Assembly: GCF_006345805.1 (NCBI RefSeq)
Contig: NC_043003.1
Span: forward strand, 84,320,001-84,384,000
Reading direction: 5' to 3'
DNA length: 64,000 bases
Source of the DNA: Octopus sinensis
Lineage: Eukaryota
A program made the translations under genes and the position numbers. Below are positions 5,927 to 57,350 of the stretch, one piece after another; the stretch's first letter is position 1, and each line of letters begins with the position of its first letter. Under the pieces are notes generated by a model. It worked only from the letters and a program-made list of their open reading frames with translations. It was not told where the DNA came from and ran no database searches.

Positions 5927-6146
5927 AATATTGCTTTCAAATTTTGGAACAAGGTCAGCAATTTCAGAGGAGGGAGTAAGTCGATTACATCAACCCTAGT
6001 ACTCAACTGGTACTTATTTTATCGATCACGAGAGAATGAAAGTCAAAGTCAATCTCAGCGGACTTTGAACTCAGGATGTAAAGCCGGACGAAATGCTACA
6101 AAGCATCATCGCCGCGGTGCTAACGATTTTGCCAGCCCACCGCCTT
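5927..6146 (-). mobile_element. tRNA-derived SINE, family A (head GGCGGCGAGCTGGCAGAA)
   Basis: A/B-box-like head (GAGTTCAAA) and body GCCTTTCATCCTTTCGGGGTCGAT shared with many copies in the window; diverged copy. Confidence 0.8.
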
Positions 6147-6246
6147 ACATACACATAAAATATTATAACATATTTTATATTAGCGTAGTATTATTCACGT
6201 TAATATGTATTTGATCTCTGTAACAATATCATAAAATTTTCTCCAG

Positions 6247-6510: not shown

Positions 6511-6911
6511 ATATTCTTTTCTAGTCTAGGCACAAGGCCCGAAATTTTGGGGGAGGGGGTTAGTCGAATAGATCGCCCCCAGTACGTAACTGGTACTTAA
6601 TTTATCGACCTCGAAAGGATGAAAGGCAAAGTCGACCTCGGCGTTATTTAAACTCAGAACGTAAAGATAGACGAAATACCTATTTTTTTACTACCCACAA
6701 GGGGCTAAACACAGAGGGGACAAACAAGGACAGACACACGGATTAAGTCGATTACATCGACCCCAGTGCGTAACTGGTACTTATTTAATCGACCCCGAAA
6801 GGATGAAAGGCAAAGTCGACCTCGGCGGAATTTGAACTCGGAACGTAACGGCAGACGAAATACGGCTACGCATCTCGCCCGGCGTTCAAACGCTTCTGAT
6901 AGCTCGCTGCC
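6511..6911 (-). mobile_element. Family A SINE dimer
   Basis: Two family A units joined at gaaatacc|tattttttta (about 6680). Confidence 0.9.
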
Positions 6912-8084
6912 TTACACACAAGATATATTGAACACACACGCGTACGCACACGCGTACGCACACGCACACGCACACACATGACATCATATAAATGTATGTA
7001 TGCGCACACACATGCGTGACTTTGTACAGAAACTTTTCTTTTAATGTTAATTAAATATCTGAAAGAGAAGAGTTATTACTTATGAAACGTAAAAATGTGC
7101 CTAGGCTTGAAAATTAGTCATTAGAAGAAATGAAGTTCATAAAACACATGAAAGACGAAAGTAGGCCGTAAAGATCCTCTTAAACGCTAATTAGATAAAT
7201 TATCAGCAGACTTAGTTTTAATTGTGAGGGCTAAGGAAATTGTTTATATGAGGTTGTAACTCATGACTCTCTGGAAGTTATAATCTTCTGGTTATTTAGT
7301 CTCCAATTCAGTTTTAAGACAAAAGACAATGTCTGCTCGATGATCAAGTATATATAGGATCAATTTCCTGCAAACCCTGACTATTGAGACCTATAAGCAA
7401 AAACGTTCCAGCCATGGTCATTTTATCTATATTTTAAGTATAATCTACTGTGAAATACATTATCGAATGTGTCATTTTCAAGAAAGACACGGTGTCATTA
7501 GAGTGAATATTGGCTACCATTTCCAACATGTATGTTATTTCTACAATGTTCAAGTCATCTTGTAGATGGGAAGTGGAAGTCACTAATGAAAATATATAAT
7601 TAACGAGTGTTTCGTCAGCTTCCTCGGGTTGTCTCGTAGGTTTACACCACGACTGAAATTCTCATAAGGTTGCAATAACCCCCAAAATTTACATCATCAC
7701 CGCGCCAGAAGACGATATTAATTTTTTTTTGCCTCTGCACGGTAGCTCGACCTGCTAGAAACAACAGCTAAATCTCTCTCCTAAGATACATTTAAAAAGG
7801 AAGACGATCCTTGATTACAAAATATATAAGGATATGTAAAATACGAGATTGTCACGGATAGAACGCCCTTGATCAGAGATGACACGGGGGTTAGTAAACA
7901 ACATACTAATCATGTAGAATCATTCTCAAGATGACGGTTCGAAATATTTGAATGTGTGCGTGTTACTCACAGATATTTAACCAGTTACGGAGGTGCCATC
8001 CACAGGAATGATTGAGCAATACACAGCAATAACAACATTTTCTCCTTTCAGGCTTTCGGGATCGATAAAATCAGAACACACCAT

Positions 8085-9210: not shown

Positions 9211-9426
9211 TCTTTACTTTTACTATAGACACATAGCCTTAAATTTTGACGTGGAGAAAAGTCGATTACATCAGCCCTAGTGCTCGACTGGTGCTTATTT
9301 CATTGACCTTCGAAAGGATGAAAGGCAAAGTTGACCTAGACGGAATTTGAACTCAGACCGCGAAGACGGACGAAATGCCGCAAAGCATTTCGCCCGGCGT
9401 GCTAACGGTTCTACCATCTCGCCGCC

Positions 9427-9428
<2 letters not shown>
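9211..9428 (-). mobile_element. Family A SINE
   Basis: Matches the other family A copies; abuts a (TAA)n tract. Confidence 0.85.
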
Positions 9429-9488
<60 letters not shown>

Positions 9489-24837: not shown

Positions 24838-24988
24838 CCCTTCTACTTTCTCCGGTGGATGAAAGGCAAAGCCAGCCTCGGCGACATTTGAACTCGGAAG
24901 ATAGAGAGCCTGAATAAATGCCACCATGCGATTTGTCAGGTGTGCTATCGATTCTGCCAGCTACACCCCAAAAACAACAACAACAACA

Positions 24989-25026
<38 letters not shown>

Positions 25027-25101
25027 CCTTTGTATTATAGGTACACGGTCTGATATTTTGGGGAAGGAGGTTCGTCGATAACATCGACCCCAGTACTCGA
25101 T

Positions 25102-25142
<41 letters not shown>

Positions 25143-25253
25143 CGACCTCGAAAGGATGAAAAATAAAGTCAACCACGGCGGAATTTGAACTCAGATCGTA
25201 ATACCGCTGTATATTTTGCTCAGCGTGCTAACGATTCTGCCAGCTCCCCACCT
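24838..25253 (-). mobile_element. Two tandem family A SINE copies, one truncated and one with an internal (TA)n
   Basis: Family A head and body seen twice, separated by AAC/AAT repeats. Confidence 0.8.
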
Positions 25254-25724
25254 TAACAACAAGAACAACAATAATAAAACAGAAGAAAACATCGGAGAAA
25301 AATCATACAATCTGGGAACAGAAATATCACTTGTCACATTTAGTTTCGTGTCACGACTGCTGCTGCTGTATCACAACTACCACCGCCGTCACCCACATCA
25401 CCACTGTCACCGCCGCCGCAACCATCCCTAACAGAACCACCACAACCATCATCGCCAACATCGACACACTACTACCACCTCCACATGCACTATAACTCCA
25501 TAACAATAACAATGACATATACATCAGATGCACCTATCGCTGCAAAAGCAACAACTGTAGTGGCAGCGGCAGCGGCAGCAGCTGCAGCACAACCATTATC
25601 AACATTATTGTTGTTCGCCTCATCATAATTATTTCATCATCAATAGCCAATCATCATCATCGTTTGGAGAGAGCAACGTAAACATCATCAATAAAACACC
25701 AACTGTCAGCATCTGTTTAAATAT

Positions 25725-27539: not shown

Positions 27540-28520
27540 ATCCAAGCCTACTGAAAGAATTTATGCTCAAACAAAAAAAACCGTCACTACTTATAGAAAA
27601 TAGTATTCAGAGGCCTATGAAAATACCCACACAACAACAGAGGACAACACAAAGAAGAGAAAAACAAGAACATATCATACCATTTATAGCGACCCACAAT
27701 TCCTGCCACCAAATCATCTTCAATATCGCTAAAGCAAACCTACCAATCATTGCTCAAAGTAAGGAATTAAGAGATATCATTACAGACTAAACTATAACTC
27801 TCAGTAAAAGACAGCCTAAAAGCTTGAAAACGTTAACAAAGGCAAGGTTTGACCTTAGCAACAAAGAACAACCATTCCCTGTGTCTAAATGCAATATTAG
27901 CCGATGCGGTACATGCCAATTAATTCATACTGGCCCATATATGAACACAAAAACGGGGAAAGTATTCACAAACGCAAATATGAACTGCAAAAGCAGAAAT
28001 TTAATCTACGGCATCGAATTTCCGAATTGTGAAGAACTGTATGTTGGCCAGACAGGCAATCCACTATTAGAATGCTCACGTGTGCATCGACAACAAATTA
28101 AGAATCCAGAAGACCGCCAAATACCGCTGAGTAAACCATCTAGCAACATGTGGCCGGAAAATATTTATAATATTTCCATTTCATAAACTATACAATCCGA
28201 ATGAAATCGAGCGAAAACCCAAACTTAGTAAACAATGATAAAAAATGATCTTATTTAAGCTTTAAAAGTTTTACCCCATATCTAAAAAATAAAAATCTCT
28301 AAAAAGTACTCCTGTCATCACTATAAAATGGTATGGGATCATTTCTAAAAATAGCTAAGCAACTACAACTTCTATCCACAGGAATGTATATAAACGACAA
28401 AATTTAACCAGTCAACTGCAGTTGAAACCAATGAAAACAACTGTCACCAACACCATATGAACCTGAAGATTACATAAATGCAAGAAGGTATATGAGTTCA
28501 ATAAGAATGGATATTTAATA
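27540..28520 (+). mobile_element. Penelope-like retroelement remnant (linker, GIY-YIG endonuclease and 3' region), disrupted
   Basis: LKEFMLKQKKPSLLIENSIQRPMKIP..IIPFIATHN; LSKRQPKSLKTLTKARF; CNISRCGTCQLI..MNCKSRNLIYGIEFPNCEELYVGQTG is the PLE-type CxxC plus GIY-YIG signature. Stops and frameshifts present. CCTGAAGAT motif near 28463. Confidence 0.8.
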
Positions 28521-28993: not shown

Positions 28994-29208
28994 ATATTCT
29001 TTTCTACTCTAGGCGCAAGACCCGAAATTTTTGGGGAGGGGTCCAGTCGATTGGATCGACACCAGTACGCAACTGGTACTTAATTTATGAACTCCGAAAA
29101 GATGAAAGGTACAGTCGACCTCGGCGGAATTTGAACTCGGAACGTAAAGACAGACGAAATAACTCTAAGCATTTCGTCCGGCGTACTTACGTTTCTGCCA
29201 GCTCACCG
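28994..29208 (-). mobile_element. Family A SINE
   Basis: Matches the other copies. Confidence 0.85.
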
Positions 29209-40240: not shown

Positions 40241-40463
40241 GTTTCTTTATTACCCACAAGGAATTAAACATAGAGGGAACAAACAAGGACAAACAAACGA
40301 ATTAAGTCAATTACATCGACCCCGGTGCGTAACTGGTACTTAATTTATCAACTCCGAAAAGATGAAAGGTAAAGTCGACCTCAGCCGAATTTGAACTCAG
40401 AAAGTAACGGCAGACGAAATACGGCTACGCATTTCGCCCGGCGTGCTAACGGTTCTGCCAGCT
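40241..40463 (-). mobile_element. Family A SINE
   Basis: Matches 6681-6911 and 55611-55840. Confidence 0.9.
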
Positions 40464-44956: not shown

Positions 44957-45149
44957 TCTTTTCTACTAAAGGCACAAGGCTTGAAATGTGGTGGGAGGAG
45001 ACCAGTCGATTGCATCGACCTCAGTGTTTCACTGGTACTTAATTTGTCGACCCCGAAAGTATGAAAGGCAAAGTTGACCTCGGCAGAATTTGAACTCAGA
45101 ACGTAAAGCATTTTGCCGGCATGCTAACGATTCTGCCAGCTCACCACCT
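44957..45149 (-). mobile_element. Family A SINE
   Basis: Matches the other copies. Confidence 0.85.
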
Positions 45150-47952
45150 AATAATATTTAATCAAATTATAATGGGATTTTTTTTCAAATATCGAAGGGC
45201 TATGAGGGTCCCTCTGAATAAAATAGGGATCAAAGAGGTTCACAGGTTAAAATGGTTGAGGGCCACTGCACTAATCATTTTATTTCTTTAATTTAAATCT
45301 TCCTTTCAGTAATTCCCCCCAACACCTTTCCCTTTCCTCAACCCCCACTTCACTGCTCTATTTGCTTTTACTTCCATATATCTCCTTTATTCTCCTTTCA
45401 CTAATCTCCCCTTCTTCTCCTTAGCTTTCACTGCTCCTCGTTCACTCCGTTTCTTTCTTTCGTCTTATCTTTTTTTTACTTTCTCTTCAACCTTCCACCC
45501 CGTTTCTTTTTACTGCCGGTCCATCTTCATGAAACATCAGCACCACATACACTACCACTACCACTACCGATACCGATACCATCACCACCACTGCAACAAC
45601 TACAACAGGCATCAATACCACCGTCACTACCAACAGTAGCTATTTCTAACACCGCAGCTGCCACCACCACCACAACAACCAACGCTAACACTACAACGTC
45701 TACCACAACAACTACACAAATAACAACACATATATCCCCCACACACACCATCACCATCAACAACAACTACACCTCCAACAAAAACTGCTACCGTAACCCC
45801 CATCGATGCCAACATGACCAACACCACCACCACCATCTAATTGATACTATACTAATGAACTATAAACGCAAAATAAATAACAGTTTGATGAATGAATGAA
45901 GGAGGTGGTTCTCGGTGCCCCCAACACTTCATAAACTGGATAGATTCCAGTATTGATTTAGGGCGGGGAGTATCATACGTTGGCCATCGACATTTCATTC
46001 TCCACTGGAACCTATTAATTACACCGACTATCCCCTATACATACATACATACATACATACATACATACATACATACATACATACATACATACGTACATAC
46101 ATACACGTACACATATTCATACATACATATGACTTCCCCCTCTCTCCCTCTCTTTCTCCAGTACCTTCTTTCTATACGCTCTTCTAATTGTAACTCCCTT
46201 CACGAATGTAACGTTTGCAGCAATCAGAACCTCAGTTATCACCACCACCACCACCACCAACAGCAACATTCACTACATCCTAATCGAGCCAACAAGAGAT
46301 CTACTAGATATAGCAGCCAAATATTCTTCATATCGAACCCTACTGTCTTTAAAAAATGAACACATTGGATAATATAATCCTAAACGCTTTTCCTAAGACA
46401 CTGTGGCCATGGCTGGAATGTCTTTGACCGTAAACCCACTTGAGCCAGATTGACCTAGGGCTAAGCAATAACAATGACAACACTCCAAGTGAATGTTAGA
46501 GCTTCTGCATAGATAACCTGCGAGAAATAGATCTCAAATTTCTTTTAAATTAATCCCCCTTGGCTTCAAAGGGTGACATGTTACATAATGTATTTCTAAG
46601 TATTTGATACTCGGGAATAGGGAGGAAATGGACATGACAGGAATGCCTTTGATCATACAGCTGTTCAATCAAGGCTAACCTGTGACTAAACAACCACACC
46701 ATCAATAATACTAACGCCAACTACAGCACCACTATTTCCAACAACACGACCAGCATAGCTAAATCTCCCTCAAATCATACTGTCATTTATAAACAAGGAA
46801 AAACGCTGTGTAATAGCTATATAGTACTAGCTATACAGTTTTAGTCACACCGAGAATTGGTGCAAAATCATTACAACCACTGCTACTTACACACCTCTAC
46901 GATTATTTTAGAATCAACATTGCTACATCTACACCTCAAAACCAACGCTACAGCCTCTACACCCCTAATAACTTGACTAGGCTTCAACAACACCGCCTCT
47001 ACACTTCTATCCCTACTATTATCCTCATCATCATCATCGACATCATCCCTACACTCATACTTCATCAGTTTTAACTTCACCTTTTTTTCCGTCACCACTG
47101 CCAATTCTCATTCATTAGAGCCTCATCTCTCAACACCCCTACCACCACAGCAGACAGCATCCATAACCAACACCGTTGCCACCACTACAGAAAGTACATT
47201 TAGCCAATATTACAGCCATGACAAACGCCATACGTTGCCAACACAACTACCGCTACTACAGACAACACATAGCCGATACATCACAACAGTCACCACAATT
47301 ACTACCAGATAGCACACACATATAACACACATAGCTAACACCACCATAACTACCACTATAGTTATGCATATGTACAACCCCTTAAATCCTCCCATACAGC
47401 CCTGACTAGATAGAAGCCAATGGAAATGCTTATCCCGACAATCTCTGCCAATAGGTCAACCAAATTATCTATAACTAGTCTGAATGTGTATGTTCTTGAC
47501 CTTCGATTGTAATATTTCGCTCAAACCACCGTTCACTCTATCCAGACACTTTCATTCAGTCCGTCTGTCTGTCTCTCACTTTCTTTCCTACACACATAGA
47601 TTGCATATATGTAAGTACACACACACATACACATAACAATTGCTTGAACAACCGCATGTAGCGAGAAATTCAACAGCGTTAGAGTTAGTCGTCAATTAAT
47701 CCCCAATAATTATAAATTCTGAGTATTTTTTATTTTGTATTTAATTACTTCAATTAGTTCAAGGTTAGCCTGGGAAATTGCCTCGTGTCTTGCAAGCCAT
47801 GAAACCTGCATATGCAAGAATTTCATGAATAATTCAACATCGAACAAGACACACGTACGAATTTTATTTTCTAAAAGAAACAATGATGGTCTAAAATTGC
47901 AATAGAACTGGAAACAGAGTTAGAAATAGTCTAGTAGTTTTGATCCATGTAA

Positions 47953-48335
47953 ATATTGCTTTCGAACTTTAGCTCGAGGGCAGCAATTTCTGGGGAGAGG
48001 TAAGTCTATTACATCGACCCTAGTGATCAACTGGTACTTATTTTATCGACCGCGAAAGAATGAACGGCAAGGTCGACCTGACGGAATTTGAACTCAACGT
48101 AAAGACGGACAAAATGCCTATTTCTTTACTACCCACAAGGGGCTAAACACAGAGAGGACAAACGGATTGAGTCGATTATATCGACCCCAGTGCGTAACTG
48201 GTGCTTAATTTATCGACACCGAAAAGATGACAGGCAAAGTCGACCTCGGCGGAATTTGAACGCGGAACGTAACGGCAGACGAAATACGGCTACGCATTTC
48301 GCCCGGCGTGCTAACGTTTCTACCAGCTCGCCACC
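47953..48335 (-). mobile_element. Family A SINE dimer
   Basis: Same junction position as 6511-6911 (aaatgcc|tatttctttac). Confidence 0.9.
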
Positions 48336-48939
48336 ATAAATACACGTAAATATTTATCGCTCTGGGAGAAAAATTAGTACGAATAACATCATGGGGAAAC
48401 TATCACCCCAATGGACAAATCTCAAACTAGAAGTAAAGCAACAATAGCAATGAAATATTCTTCAAAGAACTCTTACCATCTTTAAAATTTAGAATCACAT
48501 CTTAGAACGGTATCGCTAAATTAATCCTTTCTAGAAAATCAGATCATATAGGCAAAATGCCATGTTGGTTAGTCAAGTGATAAAGCGACGAAAGAAAACA
48601 TGTCTTCCTTGATAGAACGCCAAACTATCGAATATTGTTCTCCAGAAGTTCTAAATGTCTTCTAATGCATTAGATAAACTGGACCGCATAAAATTAACTA
48701 CCTTACTCAGAGACGTAACGACACTCTTGCGGTGGATCAGAACACTAAAACCACGATTTAGTAGAGTAACATAAAGAATAATACAAACGTCGCTTCAACA
48801 TAATAATAAGTGAAATTAATGTTATGTTATAAATTTACCGTTTTGTTTTTATAATTTTCAATGTTGTCTTTACTGTCTCTATATGAATTTCTTTTCATAC
48901 ATACATATATACCATATATACATTAATATATGCGTGCGC

Positions 48940-49974: not shown

Positions 49975-50102
49975 ACAAACTCCGATAATGATGAAAGGCA
50001 AAGTCGACCTCGATGGAATTTGAACTCTGAATGTAAAGACAGACGAAAGGCCACTAAACATTTTATCCAACTCGCTAACATTCATGTCAGCTCGTCGCCT
50101 TA
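49975..50102 (-). mobile_element. Family A SINE, 5' part only
   Basis: Head and part of the body; ends in a (GATA)n tract. Confidence 0.75.
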
Positions 50103-50749
50103 AAAAAAACCCCTCTTGATGAAGAATGGAAACCGAAGCAAAGGGTTCACTTCACAAAGAATTAAATCACCCCTAACGCATAAAATAACACGCAAATTAA
50201 ATTCATCAAGGATTATTATCTCAGTATTTTAAATATAACTTTTGATTACTCAACCAGAAGTATTGTTCATTATAATCTCTAACTTAACGACCTTAATTGG
50301 CATTAATTACTAGCAGTTTAAGCTAAAGTAATATTGTTAATATTTAACAAGTGTCATGCACCATGCTATTAATAATAATATTGCATTCTAAATTCTATAA
50401 ATAATGTAATTGGCAGAAAATAATAAAATCAGCAAAACCATCTGTTTAACATGGTAAACTACTCTATGCCTTAGCTAGTTATTATTTACTTTATACAATT
50501 TTTAAATTCCTTTGCCATATATGAGAAAAAGAGATGACAAAGGGCTAAAAAATTATCTTATTAACTTCATTGGCTTACTACCGTTTCTGCTATAAGATGA
50601 GTGCCTGAGTAACACTTTATAGCTTCATCGGAACCCCAGACATGAAATACTCGACTAACATTACGTTCTGAAGCATATCTATATTGAGTTCTACACCATG
50701 TTATTAGTATTGCTATGTCTAAGCGAACGATCGATCGATTGATTGTTAG

Positions 50750-51822: not shown

Positions 51823-52314
51823 AAATATATTACCTACATCAGCAGTATACTTCTATTCATTTTAGGCTAATGCTCTATTGTTAAGTCATTTATTGGCTAC
51901 AACTTCACCTCTAATCACTCACATTGATAAGGTTTCAATCGGTAATTCGATAAACTAATCGTCAATTTCCACATCCTTCGAGTTGTGCAAACCGCATTCT
52001 CGCTTCTCTCAGTTATTCAGTGCATGAGCAATTATGTGAATTCAATATTCACACTATATAGGAACATTAAATCGACAAGTACTTTATGTTATGGTTCACA
52101 AAAGTGTGAAAAGGAAACCTAGCCAGAACTTGGACTGAAAACATATAAGGCCATAACTAAATATCACAAGCGTTTTGTCCGACGCTAACCAAACTCGATT
52201 TAAGCAATGAAAAAACAAAATATTAGTTTACGCAACATATGCAGTAATCGCCACTACACCCATCCTTTCTGAACATCTCCGCTATAAACAAGAATGAATA
52301 TTCATAAAGAGTTA

Positions 52315-52522
52315 AGACGGCGAGGTGGCAGAATCGTTAGTACGCCAGGCAAAATGCTTAACGGCATTTCATCTGTCTTTACGTCCTGAGTTCAAATTTC
52401 GCCGAGGTCGACTTTGCCTTTTATTCTTTCCGAATCGATGAAATAAGTACACTGGTGTCAGTGTAATCGGCTTACGCTCTCCCCGCGAACTTACTGGCCT
52501 TGTGCCAAAATTTGAAACCAAT
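52315..52522 (+). mobile_element. Family A SINE
   Basis: ggcgaggtggcagaatcgttag...gagttcaaatttcgccgaggtcgac in sense orientation. Confidence 0.85.
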
Positions 52523-53352
52523 ATTTATAAAGAGTGAATTGTTTGTAGAAGCAAGCGTAATGGGTTGATCAGTCAGCATCTCCGATGAACAAATGATATA
52601 TGTAAAGTGTAATAGACACGACTTAGAATCGAAGGTTGATCAATGGTGGTTGTCACACTGTACAAAATTCACCCATAAATAAATGAAGCCAAATGCAATT
52701 AAGTATCAAATAGGAGATATGAATACAAAGTTACAAATGTGTCAAGTGCTCACGGGCAAGCGGGTACCCCAAGCACACCCAACATTCTTTACGATATGCA
52801 AATTAAATCTTGAAATTTCATTAAATTGATCCCCCTCTGTCCCTCTCTACGTCTGCTTCTTCCAACTGACCAACTTCAATGCATGTTAACCACGTAGTCG
52901 TTCTTAGTATGTCGATCTGACATTCTGAAATGTACCACTTATAGAACGAGAAGACAACATGTAAAGTTTTATTCTAAATTAAGTTTTCTCCTTAATGCCT
53001 CTCCGTATAGCTAGCACGGAAATTATCTAATTAGTTTAATTTAGTCTTCAGTTTATCAATATCCAAATGCCATACATATTATTCAAAGATTCGAGGCGGA
53101 GAAACCTTGACTGTTTGAAACGACTTTTCACTGATTATTAATTATCATTTCTTTTCTAAGTATAAGGCCAAATTAATAGAATCAACTTCAATTACTTACT
53201 AGTAATTATGTGAGCCAGGGAGAGAAACTCTATGTGGTTGCTGGGCCAGCTAGAAATAGCAACCAAACACGCCTTAAATCAAATACTACTGTAAATGAGG
53301 GAAATAAGACATGAACATGCAGATTAGTCACAACAACGTAAAAAGAGATTTC

Positions 53353-53471
53353 TTAGGTTCTTTTAGTGTTTCTTTCCCAATTGAACAGGTATGACAAGGC
53401 AGAGGAAATTTTCTGCTCCTTAGCATGTGCTTCCGCATAACTGCCATTTCTTGCGCCTCCTTTTGCTATGC
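53353..53471 (-). CDS. Candidate terminal coding exon (phase 1): IAKGGARNGSYAEAHAKEQKISSALSYLFNWERNTKRT*
   Basis: Acceptor ccaactttag|; the longest frame is phase-compatible with the 158-nt exon. No homology recognised. Confidence 0.25.
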
Positions 53472-53717
53472 CTAAAGTTGGTCAAAATTGGAAGGACTTT
53501 GATCATAGATCTATTCGTTCAGAGTTGATCTGGGGTTAAATAACAACAGTTATGAAAACCAAAATACATTTTCTCACTAGTTAACAAAACGAAACGAAAT
53601 GCTCCGAATCATTTAGTCCGGCGCTCTTCCATTTCGGTCAAATAATCACCCTACTTGTAATGTCTTGTCATTTACAATAACTAACAGTCAATTTATAATT
53701 ATTCATATTTTGTGTAT

Positions 53718-53779
<62 letters not shown>

Positions 53780-53836
53780 ATTCTTGAATAATATTGAAGT
53801 TAAACTAAACGATTCAGGAATCAAATAGATACGTAC

Positions 53837-53994
53837 AGAAAGAAGTCAAAAGTTGTGCTCTGTTTTCAAAATGATGGCTAGATATGAAACCAAGCAGCAT
53901 TTGATCAAGACTCCAGTCTATGGCAGGCAACTTCCCCAGGTAATTGTAATAACTATTCTCGAGAAAAAATTCAACAGTGACAGGATTAAATGTC
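53837..53994 (-). CDS. Candidate internal coding exon (158 nt, phase 2 to 1): TFNPVTVEFFLENSYYNYLGKLPAIDWSLDQMLLGFISSHHFENRAQLLTSF
   Basis: Acceptor tctcttattacttttctgtacag| and donor TCT|GTACGT; only one frame is open across the exon. No homology recognised. Confidence 0.4.
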
Positions 53995-54544
53995 CTGTAC
54001 AGAAAAGTAATAAGAGACCTGCATAAGATTCGATCATTGGTCTTGTGACCAGGATTAGTCACTAAGATAGTGTGTTCTCATCAGTAATATCGTGTAATTT
54101 CCATTAATTAAAATGTATTGGGATTAGTCTATCGAGTATGTTCATGTCTTTCCTCTCTCTCTCTCTCTCTCTCTCCCTCATACACACTCACTATACCCCT
54201 ACACACACACACATACGTACTCACTCACTTCACACGTAGACACACAGTCACTTCATACACATACACTCACATCACATACACACGCACATCGAGGGATTTT
54301 CTACGTTGTCATTCGACTTTTAGAAATAGCAGAGAAATGTCACTCGAATCGCACTCTACCGTTCTTAGAAAAGGAGGATACACTAGACAACAAATTCTTT
54401 CAGATGCAAAATTACATGAGAGCCACGGCTGGAATGCTTTTTATCATATATCTACTAATAAGAACTAACCTGGGAATAAAGACCAGCGTACACATATACC
54501 TAAAATATATAGTATTACATTAAACTAATATCATAGATAATTGA

Positions 54545-55036
54545 TCAAAATGGACAACTAAAAACTAGCTTACCAGGATAATTCGAAGATAGATCAAGCG
54601 CTTCTTTGTAAGACTTCAAAAGAACTGAATTATCATTTGATTTAAAACACAACATATTCGACCAAGTCGTGAATTTTAAGTTGTGCTTCCTTCGTCTGCG
54701 ATATGAATGAAATTCCCTCCTGCTCTCTTGCACAGCGGTTTGTGAAGTGTTCGGGTCTTCCCCATCGCTCGGTTCATCTTCAGCCTTCATCATTTCCTGG
54801 TTGACTCCTTTCATACACTGTTCTACTTCCTCCGCTGTTTCTTCTGTTACTGTTTCTTTTCTGTGTAAATTTCTCATTTCCACAAACCTATGATACCAGT
54901 CATACACGGTAGATTTCTTCAATGAAGTTGTACTATAGGCTGCTTGTAGTAGCTGAAAAGTTTCATCCACAGATTTACCGAGTCTGACGCAAAAGTTTAT
55001 AACACACCACTGTTCCTTTAGGAGAGCGTTACTCAT
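54545..55036 (-). CDS. ORF with N-terminal mariner/Mos1-type helix-turn-helix followed by an acidic, non-transposase-like tail
   Basis: Open ATG ORF of 163 aa. EQWCVINFCVRLGKSVDETFQLLQAAYSTTSLKKSTVYDWYHRF matches the mariner N-terminal HTH pattern (EQR..IKFC..LGKS..ET...L..AYG...L....V..W..RF). An in-frame TAA lies 27 nt upstream of the ATG. Candidate acceptor ctaatgcag| at 55087 and donor CTG|GTAAGC at 54574. Confidence 0.7.
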   Translation of the reverse strand: MSNALLKEQWCVINFCVRLGKSVDETFQLLQAAYSTTSLKKSTVYDWYHRFVEMRNLHRKETVTEETAEEVEQCMKGVNQEMMKAEDEPSDGEDPNTSQTAVQESRREFHSYRRRRKHNLKFTTWSNMLCFKSNDNSVLLKSYKEALDLSSNYPGKLVFSCPF

Positions 55037-55610
55037 TTCGGAGATGGAGCAGGTGGGGATTTATGTTTTTCAGTTCTTCTATACACTCTGCATTAGTTGA
55101 TACAACATATGTACATACAGACGGATGAATATAAATAATATATACGTTATTAGATGATGCTAAACAATGTAGTTAAGATTGGCCACGTCTTTGCAACATT
55201 AATTTACAGACTTCGTTGATGAAAGTATTCAGAAGAATGGAAAAGCTATGAATGCAATTAAAAATTAATAAGAAAAACCCATTTTAAGAATAATTAACAT
55301 CCAAACCAACCAATTATAATGTTTCACTTGTAAGTAATTAACCAAAATACTTAAACTCCAGCTTCTCTCCATCTACAAGCCACCTTCATAATTTTGTATC
55401 TGAAGAGGAATGTTCAAGATTTATGTCAATGTCAAATGCTAGAAAGATGAGTCAATATGTTGCCGGTTTACCGATTGAAAGGTTTGCAGTTCGTGTGTTG
55501 TCAGCTGTTGTGCATTGTGTCTTAGAAAAATACATACTTAAATGTCAACGGCTCAATTCATCAGGGTATATAACTATATTTCACACAGGAGGCTCATAGC
55601 CTATAACATT

Positions 55611-55840
55611 TATTTCTTTATTGCCCGCAGGGAGTTAAACATAGAGGGAACAAACAAGGACAGACAAAGGGATTAAGTCGATTACATCGACTCAAGTGCG
55701 CAACTGGTACTTACTTAATCGACCCCGAAAGGATGAAAGGCAAGGTCGACCTCGGCGGAATTTGAACTCAGAACGTAGCGACAGACGAAATACCGCTAAG
55801 CACTTCGCCCGGCGTCCTAACGTTTCTGCCAGCTCGCCGC
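55611..55840 (-). mobile_element. Full-length family A SINE with 11-bp target-site duplication
   Basis: cctataacatt at 55600-55610 and again at 55841-55851. Confidence 0.92.
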
Positions 55841-57350
55841 CCTATAACATTAAAGTATAGTACGTTGAAATGTTACTGGTGAAGTCAAATTCTCAAATTA
55901 TTCAACATACTGAGGTACATACAATTAGTGAGAGATATCCTTGAGCAGTCGATAGTCCACTTATGTAGGTTTCAGTCTAAGGGCACCTGTGACTCATGCT
56001 TACTCTTCTTAGTCATATATAGTTCATACCTTTTGAGGACCAGTAGTTAAAGTAAGTGAGGGTCTTATTTAACTTCAGGAAATCCGTACAGAGTGGAAAA
56101 AATTCCATCTTTTTGCTTATCCTTCTTCTGATCTCAATCTTTCTATTGTCCCTTTTACATTACTGAGAGTTTCCGATATTCTTCTAATCTCTTCAGGCTT
56201 TTTCTTTTTCCACAACCATAAAGGGTTTCCTACCCTCGTAACTCCTGGCCAATCATGTGCTGAAGGTTTCTTGGTCATCATCGATTCCTAGCGCTCGCAG
56301 CGCCGAAGATGAGATAATTTCGTTTGCTTCTGATCTAGATATGATCAGATTAGAGACCAAGTGTGCTCTAGAAACAGTCACTGTCTTAATCTCTGGTGCC
56401 TACTCTTATTAGTACAGCTACTTCTGTTGCTGTTTTTTCTTTTGCTCTTCTGCACGTGGCCTTTTATGCCACGCGCGGAGCAACTAGGGCTTCTGTCCTG
56501 CACTGCCATTCCCATTGAAAGCTTCTCCACTCCCTAAATGTGGTGTAGCTCCAGAGTAACCTTGTAATCATCAAAAGTTTAACAGAACTTGGAGATGCAA
56601 ACCGACCTGACCACATATTATTGCTGGTCACGTTTGTGCCCACGTCATGTGTGTCCTGTGAGCACAAGTAACTACAATGACAAACTAATGATTAACGATA
56701 ATGCCATTATGTGAGGCCATGCCAAATATTGTGGCAATAGCCTTTTAGAGTTAGAGTGCATCAGCGCTACTTTACTCCTTGCCTGAATATTGGTCTTAAA
56801 GACCACTCCTATCAACCACTGAGAACGCATCTTGCCGTACATTGGCTATGGTTTCCTTCAATTTTTCTTTCGAGAGTATACAGAAACATACCAATTTTTT
56901 TCTTTTTTGTAAAAATAAGAGGTATTTCACCTTCTTCCATGACCTTTTTTCAATAAATTCGTCGGGTAAAGAGGCAATACCTTTTGTAACGAACTTCTTC
57001 CTTTGCCTCTTTTTTCTTGAATTTGCTGAAGATGAGTCGCTTCTTTTGACTCATGAGATTTGCAAAGGTGGAACCTGGTAGTTGTTGTAGTTGATGTTCG
57101 TACAGTTTTTTTCATTCAAATAAACATTTTCAACATTAGTATCGTTTGTGTCTCCCATTGTAAACAGTAGGCGTTTAAATCTGAACATTTTCCTGCACGT
57201 TTGATTCTTTCCCATTATCTGATTATTCTAAATTCTGCTTTTTTTTTTTTGTTTTGGATTTTTGTGTTTCAAAATAATTTGAGGGTGTGTGTATTTACAT
57301 TACTGAGGCTATTGCTATTACACTGTGCTGACTTCCATGTTATTCGTGAA

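What the first reader, a model, noticed from the sequence alone, without database searches (positions are those of the whole stretch)
53353..55087. Candidate domesticated mariner HTH gene with spliced, non-transposase downstream exons
Seen: an undisrupted 163-codon ORF, while the other TE-derived coding remnants here are broken. It has a mariner HTH in the first ~52 aa, then acidic (EDEPSDGED) and basic (RRRRKH, NLS-like) segments. No GRP linker, DD34D domain or TIR is visible. There is an acceptor at 55087, a donor at 54574, a 74-nt intron-like gap, a 30-nt exon candidate (54470-54499), a 158-nt exon (53837-53994) and a terminal exon (53353-53471). Established: mariner HTHs bind TIR DNA and have been domesticated (for example in SETMAR). 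Inference: this may be a host DNA-binding protein or transposon repressor. A frame puzzle remains. Spliced in the HTH frame the product ends at about 189 aa with a hydrophobic tail (GICVRWSLFPGHLILSLLNFFSRIVITITWGSCLP*). A second frame (MCTLVFIPRTFNPVTVEFF...TKRT*, about 100 aa) stays open across all three downstream exons, implying a 1-nt indel or assembly error, alternative splicing, or an overlapping ORF.
Basis: partly seen in the sequence, partly recalled or inferred. Interest (0 to 1): 0.72.

Follow-up and report, generated by a model that had tools for sequence, protein, structure and literature searches.

The report
Domesticated mariner HTH gene, selected

Summary
The 163-codon ORF (54545-55036, minus strand) is real. 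Residues 12-51 pass Pfam's threshold for HTH_48. The confident part of the predicted structure (aa 1-60) best matches the Mos1 and SETMAR DNA-binding domains. The window holds no linker, second HTH, catalytic core or TIR. The flanking inverted repeat is two copies of a dispersed SINE.

A related species has a syntenic orthologue, collinear over about 2.7 kb. Its ORF is open, with one in-frame indel and dN/dS 0.38 (p=0.0012). A much more distant clade of three sequence groups has the same HTH (70% identity), the same non-transposase junction RFVEMR and dN/dS of about 0.1. In both clades the coding exon ends in a phase-1 "P-G|GTAAG" donor, and conservation of the reading frame stops there.

So the core reading, a domesticated mariner HTH gene, is supported.

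The proposed acceptor at 55087 is not conserved. The three downstream exons and the "open second frame" are no better than background, with no homologues and no Pfam match. What the donor joins to is still unknown.

This is a new, apparently unannotated member of a known kind: co-option of a transposase DNA-binding module.

The parts
54574..55036 (-). Coding part of the main exon: ATG to the last exon base before the donor (463 nt, 154 codons plus 1 base, phase 1).
   Evidence: ORF. Coordinates verified. dN/dS 0.38 (p=0.0012), a single in-frame indel, and a 3.7% chance of staying open under neutral change.
54884..55003 (-). Mariner HTH1 (Pfam HTH_48), aa 12-51. The predicted three-helix bundle spans aa 3-62.
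   Evidence: Pfam 27.3 bits against a cut-off of 24.1. Profile against PDB: Mos1 3HOS and SETMAR 7S03 at E about 2e-4. AF2 pLDDT 75-91. Foldseek top 7 hits are Mos1 or SETMAR, rmsd 1.3-1.6 A. 93% nt identity to the orthologue and omega 0.16.
54872..54889 (-). Junction RFVEMR, where similarity to transposases ends. Transposases read RFKEGRES...GRP here.
   Evidence: FVE[ML]R is found only in P0001 and P0002 among the 150 best deep-search hits. 77 of 111 junctions have xxG[RKN]. tblastn similarity to transposases stops at 54872.
54755..54784 (-). Acidic segment AEDEPSDGED, part of a fast-evolving, low-confidence middle region.
   Evidence: 82-83% nt identity, which is background. Omega 0.46.
54683..54703 (-). 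Basic patch YRRRRKH (NLS-like). It reads YRRRKRH in the orthologue and is absent from the distant clade.
54599..54667 (-). C-terminal motif TWSNMLCFKSNDNSVLLKSYKEA, identical in the orthologue. The only 2 nt differences are synonymous.
   Evidence: 88-95% nt identity block 54590-54709.
54568..54573 (-). Splice donor GTAAGC following CCT G (phase 1).
   Evidence: GGTAAGC is identical in the orthologue and is followed at once by a 7-nt indel that changes the frame. The distant clade has CCG G|GTAAGT in the same phase. Two distant-clade contigs leave the intron exactly here.
54545..54573 (-). Read-through tail of the ORF (..KLVFSCPF*). Probably intron sequence, or an alternative unspliced C-terminus.
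   Evidence: The tail differs in length and frame in every lineage.
55037..55230 (-). Conserved block upstream of the ATG (90-98% identity). Probably 5' UTR and/or core promoter. An in-frame TAG lies at 55079-55081.
55611..55842 (.). Lineage-specific SINE insertion with target-site duplication AATGTTATAG. One arm of the apparent inverted repeat.
   Evidence: Absent from orthologue L001. At least 13 copies in the window.
52313..52450 (.). Second, oppositely oriented copy of the same SINE. It is the other arm of the apparent inverted repeat and is not a TIR.
53353..54499 (-). Listed as unsupported.
   Evidence: Background-level splice motifs and open frames. No Pfam match. No homologues. No similarity to distant-clade tails.

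Best explanation
This is a single-copy host gene that arose when the first helix-turn-helix (HTH1) of a mariner transposase was captured. The rest of the transposase was lost or replaced.

Shown:
- The HTH is a mariner HTH1.
- Similarity to transposases ends at residue 55, at a lineage-specific junction (RFVEMR).
- No linker, HTH2, catalytic domain or TIR remains.
- The locus is syntenic in a related species.
- The coding exon is under purifying selection there, and in a far more distant clade that shares the same junction and the same phase-1 donor.

Inferred:
- The 463-nt exon encodes nearly the whole protein.
- The exon is spliced at the conserved donor to a still unidentified downstream exon that adds at most a short tail and the 3' UTR.
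- The product is a small nuclear protein. Its three-helix HTH docks on DNA, most plausibly on mariner-TIR-like sequences scattered through the genome. It could also pair with the HTH1 dimer interface of mariner-type proteins.
- The largely disordered acidic and basic region and the conserved C-terminal helix motif (TWSNMLCFKSNDNSVLLKSYKEA) would recruit partners. On this view it acts as an adaptor or regulator and not as an enzyme.

My confidence in the identity (a domesticated, selected mariner-HTH1 gene) is about 0.85. My confidence in the mechanism as stated is about 0.35.
For: Identity of the HTH:
- Pfam match above the gathering score.
- PDB profile hits to Mos1 and SETMAR.
- Fold matches to Mos1 and SETMAR, rmsd 1.3-1.6 A.
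- 40-50% identity to transposase N-termini, restricted to 55045-54872.

Not a transposon:
- No other copy in the window.
- No transposase remnant.
- The flanking inverted repeat is two SINE copies. One is a lineage-specific insertion with a target-site duplication.
- Only two protein clusters worldwide share this gene, each with one sequence type per sample.

Synteny: L001 is collinear with window 57251-54520.

Selection:
- Omega 0.38, Fisher p=0.0012. Omega for the HTH alone is 0.16.
- P(ORF stays open | neutral)=0.037.
- One in-frame indel in the coding exon, against 16 indels (13 frame-breaking) in 1667 nt of flank.
- Omega 0.10-0.12 (p<=0.0014) among the three groups of the distant clade.

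Common origin of the two clades:
- 70% identity across the HTH, against 50% or less to any transposase.
- The unique FVE[ML]R junction.
- The same phase-1 P-G|GTAAG donor.

Donor use:
- The frame is not kept after the donor.
- L004 and L015 leave the intron at the donor while being 100% identical upstream to intron-containing contigs.

Short C-terminal extension: no product with a long extension exists among the relatives.
Against: - No transcript evidence exists for the window's own species.
- I could not verify the library type (RNA or DNA) of the runs behind L004 and L015.
- The non-HTH half is not detectably similar between the window and the distant clade (shuffle p=0.46 and 0.08). Homology of the whole exon across that distance therefore rests on the junction motif and the donor phase.
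- A lone HTH1 lacks the linker and HTH2 that mariner transposases use for specific TIR binding (established knowledge from the Mos1 and SETMAR complexes). Its DNA binding may be weak or non-specific.
- The basic NLS-like patch is absent from the distant clade.
- The structure model is low confidence beyond residue 60.
Confidence: 0.75

Rival explanations
1. Single-exon gene. The mRNA is not spliced at 54574 and the protein is the 163-aa ORF as read (174-178 aa in relatives). On this view the GTAAG is a coincidence.
For: Nearly all related contigs read straight through the site. In every lineage a stop follows within 7-23 codons. No long spliced product is on record.
Against: The P-G|GTAAG site keeps its position and phase across saturated synonymous divergence. 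The sequence right after it suffers a frame-changing 7-nt indel between close relatives. The tails differ in every lineage. Two contigs diverge exactly at the site.
Confidence: 0.17
2. Exon 1 is spliced to 54470-54499, 53837-53994 and 53353-53471. The result is either a 189-aa protein with a hydrophobic tail or, after a 1-nt correction, a longer product in the second frame.
For: The splice-like motifs and the open frames are in the sequence as described. A distant-clade contig (L004) also adds a roughly 33-aa hydrophobic tail after the donor.
Against: - Equivalent acceptor-donor pairs occur about 2 per kb on both strands, and the window has 64 comparable open segments.
- There is no Pfam match and no homologue.
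- There is no similarity to the L004 or L015 tails.
- Hydrophobic tails are what T-rich intron sequence translates to.
- By my hand Kyte-Doolittle estimate (not a tool result), both tails are below the usual transmembrane threshold and contain charged residues.
- The second frame is out of phase with exon 1.
Confidence: 0.05
3. A decaying or non-autonomous mariner relic whose ORF is open by chance.
For: The HTH is of transposon origin. The window is rich in repeats.
Against: Synteny, omega well below 1 in two clades, an in-frame-only indel, 3.7% neutral ORF survival, and no TIRs or further copies.
Confidence: 0.03

Closest known systems
SETMAR (Metnase) DNA-binding domain, from Hsmar1 mariner, in anthropoid primates
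   Same: A mariner transposase DNA-binding module kept by a host under selection. The HTH1 fold matches (7S03: profile E about 2e-4; Foldseek probability 0.93).
   Different: SETMAR keeps both HTH motifs, the linker and the (mutated) catalytic domain, and it is fused to a SET domain. Here only HTH1 survives, followed by non-transposase sequence. The lineage is different and the origin independent.
Caenorhabditis F-box A2 family carrying HTH_48 (bioRxiv 10.1101/2022.01.28.478163)
   Same: Only the Mos1-type HTH (PF17906) was co-opted, without the transposase core.
   Different: There the HTH is fused to F-box/FTH domains and the family expanded to about 30 genes. Here the gene is single copy and the remainder has no recognisable domain.
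Drosophila Tc1/mariner DNA-binding-module domestications (CG4570, cag, toy, LOC26532114; PMC13548663)
   Same: It meets the same criteria: loss of DDE, microsynteny, dN/dS below 1, and an intron acquired in the domesticated lineage. Omega here (0.38, and 0.1 in the distant clade) falls within their range of 0.1-0.7.
   Different: Different phylum and independent events. Those genes mostly keep a paired-like bipartite DNA-binding domain or most of the transposase length. This one keeps about 55 residues.
Mos1 mariner transposase N-terminal domain
   Same: The best structural and sequence match for aa 6-55. Conserved core residues include W47, F51, the FC motif and LGKS.
   Different: No GRP/AT-hook linker, no HTH2, no DD34D core and no TIRs.
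KP repressor of the P element (recalled from memory as an analogy, not tested)
   Same: A truncated protein that keeps only the transposase's N-terminal DNA-binding and dimerisation part could inhibit transposition by site competition or subunit poisoning.
   Different: KP is encoded by internally deleted, mobile, multi-copy elements. This is a fixed, syntenic, single-copy gene conserved far longer than a typical transposon family stays active.

Membership tests
Mariner transposase HTH1 (Pfam HTH_48, PF17906) | Sequence match above Pfam's gathering score | tested here: met
   27.3 bits against 24.1, E 4e-6, aa 12-51.
Mariner transposase HTH1 (Pfam HTH_48, PF17906) | Three-helix HTH fold that superposes on Mos1 or SETMAR HTH1 | tested here: met
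   AF2 pLDDT 75-91 for aa 1-60. The top 7 Foldseek hits are Mos1 or SETMAR, rmsd 1.3-1.6 A over 42-45 residues, probability 0.87-0.99. E-values are weak (0.16-0.9) because the alignment is short.
Autonomous or relic mariner element | Linker, second HTH and DD34D catalytic domain, or their remnants | tested here: not met
   tblastn with 7 mariner-type proteins hits only 55045-54872. Nothing else in the window at E<=10.
Autonomous or relic mariner element | Terminal inverted repeats flanking the coding region | tested here: not met
   The only long inverted repeat is two copies of a SINE with at least 13 copies in the window. One is a species-specific insertion with a target-site duplication.
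Autonomous or relic mariner element | Multiple dispersed copies | tested here: not met
   One copy in the window. One sequence type per sample in about 25 runs of related species. Whole genomes could not be searched.
Domesticated transposase-derived host gene (criteria as in PMC13548663) | Orthologues in conserved genomic context | tested here: met
   L001 is collinear with the window over about 2.7 kb. Not testable for the distant clade, whose contigs are under 2 kb.
Domesticated transposase-derived host gene (criteria as in PMC13548663) | Purifying selection (dN/dS significantly below 1) and an intact ORF | tested here: met
   Omega 0.38 (p=0.0012). Omega 0.10-0.12 (p<=0.0014) in the distant clade. 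The ORF is intact in all 6 sequence types.
Domesticated transposase-derived host gene (criteria as in PMC13548663) | Transcription, with integration into host gene structure (introns, promoter) | tested here: inconclusive
   Supporting signs are the conserved phase-1 donor, ragged common 5' ends, and two contigs that leave the intron at the donor. Library types are unknown, and there is no RNA evidence for the window species.
Sequence-specific DNA-binding protein or transposon repressor | Binds DNA (TIR-like sites) or inhibits transposition | not testable with these tools
   Inference from the HTH1 fold only.

The most novel reading that the evidence does not exclude
The gene may be an ancient lineage-wide regulator. 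On this reading it has escaped annotation.

Its single coding exon would be followed by a long intron removed by recursive splicing. In the distant clade, two contigs join the exon end directly to sequences that begin with a regenerated donor (GTGAGT, GTAAGT). That is the signature of ratchet-point intermediates.
Probability: 0.15. Interest if true: 0.6.

Novelty: new member of a known kind. Interest (0 to 1): 0.5.

Why it matters
Co-option of transposase DNA-binding domains is a recognised source of new regulators. Well-supported cases outside vertebrates, flies, nematodes and plants are few, and the surveys of molluscs I found did not list a mariner-HTH case.

This locus meets the usual domestication criteria on sequence evidence alone. 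It keeps an unusually small piece of the transposase, about 55 residues. No named protein from any source matched it in the searched collection.

It is a clean, testable candidate for asking what a lone mariner HTH1 can do for a host. It also shows how such a capture acquires an intron.

Tried and rejected
- TIRs: the 138-nt inverted repeat bracketing the ORF is two SINE copies.
- Transposase remnant downstream: none.
- Spliced-transcript reading of P0159/L004: rejected as a simple exon-exon junction. The continuation itself begins with GTGAGT, and a second contig (L015) diverges 5 nt later. I kept it as a possible recursive-splice intermediate.
- Orthologous sequence for the downstream 'exons': a composite query of all open segments from 52900-54560 found nothing. 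All three contigs from the octopod relative stop 65 nt past the donor.
- Homology of the non-HTH half with the distant clade: not significant. MAFFT's 'NYP' and 'REF' anchors are therefore not relied on.
- P0022 as the parental transposon lineage: only 44% identical, no closer than other transposases, and its contig shares no repeats with the window.
- Identifying the species or library types from run accessions in the literature: no hits.
- Tail-anchor or transmembrane reading of the hydrophobic tails: by my hand hydropathy estimate (not a tool result) both are below the usual threshold and contain charged residues. Not pursued.
- tRNA genes and Pfam domains in other long open segments of the window: none.
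- Designed-repeat and RxLR hits in the single-sequence PDB search are low-complexity helical matches and were ignored.

Full report
**Observation**

An in-frame TAG lies 15 codons upstream of the ATG, so the N-terminus is complete. Residues 12-51 match Pfam HTH_48, the first helix-turn-helix of the Mos1 mariner transposase, at 27.3 bits against a gathering score of 24.1.

A profile of the ORF and its relatives finds the Mos1 transposase (3HOS, 4U7B) and the SETMAR DNA-binding domain (7S03) as the best solved structures, at E about 2e-4. An AlphaFold2 model is confident only for residues 1-60, a three-helix bundle with pLDDT 75-91. Its seven best structural matches are all Mos1 or SETMAR chains, with rmsd 1.3-1.6 A over 42-45 residues and probability 0.87-0.99. 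The E-values are weak because the aligned stretch is short.

**It is not a transposon**

Seven mariner-type proteins recovered from the deep search, including a full-length 351-aa transposase, align to the window only at 55045-54872 (aa 1-55, 40-50% identity). No linker, second HTH or catalytic core is detectable anywhere in the 64 kb, even at E<=10. There is no second copy of the region in the window.

The one long inverted repeat that brackets the ORF (52313-52450 and 55707-55844) is two copies of a dispersed SINE-like repeat with at least 13 copies in the window. The copy at 55611-55842 has a target-site duplication (AATGTTATAG) and is missing from the orthologous locus of a related species. 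So there are no TIRs.

**Orthologue and selection**

Among 5.8 billion protein clusters, the whole ORF has one close relative: P0001, 174 aa and 77% identical, from three sequencing runs. Its contig L001 is collinear with window 57251-54520, apart from two window-specific segments. It is therefore a syntenic orthologue and not a dispersed copy.

- Flanking DNA is 75-87% identical.
- The HTH part is 93% identical, and the 51 nt before the ATG are 98% identical.
- A C-terminal block is 88-95% identical. Within it, the 23-residue motif TWSNMLCFKSNDNSVLLKSYKEA is unchanged and carries only two synonymous differences.
- Nei-Gojobori dN/dS is 0.38 for the exon (20 synonymous and 33 non-synonymous differences; Fisher p=0.0012) and 0.16 for the HTH.
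- In simulations, 53 substitutions drawn from the flank spectrum leave the ORF open only 3.7% of the time.
- The exon has one indel, of 15 nt. The 1667 nt of aligned flank has 16 indels, 13 of them not multiples of three.

**A much older relative**

An exhaustive profile search of 1.84 billion representatives gave 442 hits. All of them covered only residues 5-80 or so.

The best hit after the orthologue, P0002 (178 aa), is 70% identical over the HTH, whereas every transposase is 50% or less. P0002 shares the junction RFVEMR at the point where transposases read RFKEGRES...GRP. FVE[ML]R occurs in no other protein among the 150 best hits, and 77 of 111 scorable junctions are of the transposase type.

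The P0002 cluster comes from about 20 runs and falls into three sequence groups that are 95-97% alike. All have the ORF intact, with dN/dS 0.10-0.12 (p<=0.0014) over the whole exon. Between the window and this clade, synonymous sites are saturated, so the split is old.

Outside the HTH the two proteins are not significantly similar (shuffle p=0.46, or 0.08 using the orthologue). I therefore claim common origin only for the HTH with its junction, and for the exon's end.

**The donor**

In the window the exon ends CCT G|GTAAGC, with 54574 the last exon base. The orthologue has the identical GGTAAGC followed at once by a 7-nt indel that shifts the frame, and the read-through tails differ.

The distant clade ends CCG G|GTAAGT, again Pro-Gly in phase 1, and its read-through tails also vary in length.

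Two contigs of that clade (L004 and L015) are 100% identical upstream to contigs that continue into the intron. They diverge 3 and 8 nt after the exon end, and each new sequence begins with a donor consensus, GTGAGT or GTAAGT. If these runs are RNA, that is the form expected of recursive-splice intermediates or of exons that start at a ratchet site. If they are DNA, they would be two unlikely structural variants. I could not determine the library type.

No relative has a product with a long extension beyond the donor. Exon 1 therefore probably encodes almost the whole protein.

The frame arithmetic is correct, but the model has no support.

- The acceptor 'cag' before 55087 is 'ctg' in the orthologue. 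Contigs of both clades run collinearly with the genome through the region upstream of the ATG.
- Acceptor-donor pairs as good as those proposed occur about 2 per kb on both strands.
- The window contains 64 non-repetitive open segments of at least 87 codons, so the 'second frame' is unremarkable.
- Neither downstream frame has a Pfam match.
- A composite query of every open segment between 52900 and 54560 found no homologue, even though the adjacent HTH ORF was recovered from the same related-species runs.
- The distant-clade tails have no counterpart in the window.
- Orthologous sequence for these segments could not be obtained, because all three contigs from the close relative break 65 nt past the donor. 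The exons are therefore unsupported, not disproved.
- The frame puzzle needs no indel or assembly error.

**Mechanism**

Shown: a selected, single-copy gene with a mariner HTH1 fold and nothing else of the transposase.

Inferred from what is established for the Mos1 and SETMAR complexes: HTH1 contacts TIR DNA and contributes to the transposase dimer interface, while specific binding normally also uses the linker and HTH2. The most likely role is a small nuclear adaptor. It would dock through HTH1 on DNA, possibly on mariner-TIR-derived sites, or on mariner-type proteins, and recruit partners through its conserved C-terminal motif.

A pure anti-transposon repressor role is possible. It fits less well with conservation across saturated synonymous divergence, which is longer than transposon families usually stay active.

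**Comparison and novelty**

The closest known cases are:
- SETMAR;
- the HTH_48-bearing F-box A2 family of Caenorhabditis;
- the DNA-binding-module domestications described in Drosophila.

This locus meets the same criteria: loss of the catalytic core, synteny, dN/dS below 1 and an acquired intron signal. It is independent of those cases and retains only about 55 transposase residues. [quoted passage not shown] No named protein from any source matched the gene.

It is a new member of a known kind. The organism was not identified with these tools.

Noticed in passing
L004 1056-1409 and L015 1045-1177 (distant-clade contigs): Two contigs join the end of the coding exon to unrelated sequences that both start with a regenerated donor consensus (GTGAGT, GTAAGT). 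In L004 a 98-nt open stretch follows and ends at AG|GTAAGC. This looks like recursive-splice or ratchet-site junctions if the runs are RNA.
   Followed up: partly
window 55611-55842, plus copies at 5971-6147, 6554-6914, 9259-9439, 24857-25255, 29037-29208, 40242-40463, 45004-45161, 48001-48338, 49979-50105 and 52313-52450: A dispersed SINE-like repeat of about 230 nt with at least 13 copies, 72-87% alike. The copy at 55611-55842 is a species-specific insertion with target-site duplication AATGTTATAG. ARAGORN finds no tRNA in the window.
   Followed up: partly
window 56638-56981: A segment of about 313-344 nt that is present in the window but absent from the orthologous contig L001. It is unique within the window, so it is either an insertion here or a deletion in the relative.
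   Followed up: partly
L003, L006 and L016, the 600 nt upstream of the ATG: In the distant clade the 5' flank is more conserved (95-97% identity) than synonymous sites of the ORF (dS 0.07-0.18). That suggests a constrained 5' UTR or promoter. Five contigs from different runs start raggedly within about 35 nt of each other, 550-583 nt upstream of the ATG, which looks like a transcription start.
   Followed up: partly
window 27791-28183 (+): A 131-codon open segment with spaced cysteines (CNISRCGTCQ ... NCKSRNLIYGIEFPNCEELYVGQTG). From memory it resembles the GIY-YIG endonuclease region of Penelope-like retroelements. It has no Pfam hit at E<=1.
   Followed up: partly
They produce the long low-complexity ORFs listed there on both strands.
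   Followed up: no
L023 6001-6738 (ENA assembly ERZ21867824): A called 245-aa 'protein' (P0022) is a mariner HTH with an intact RFKEGRESVRDD junction that runs straight into microsatellite translation ([12 protein letters not shown]). It is a broken mariner relic, for contrast with the intact gene studied here.
   Followed up: partly
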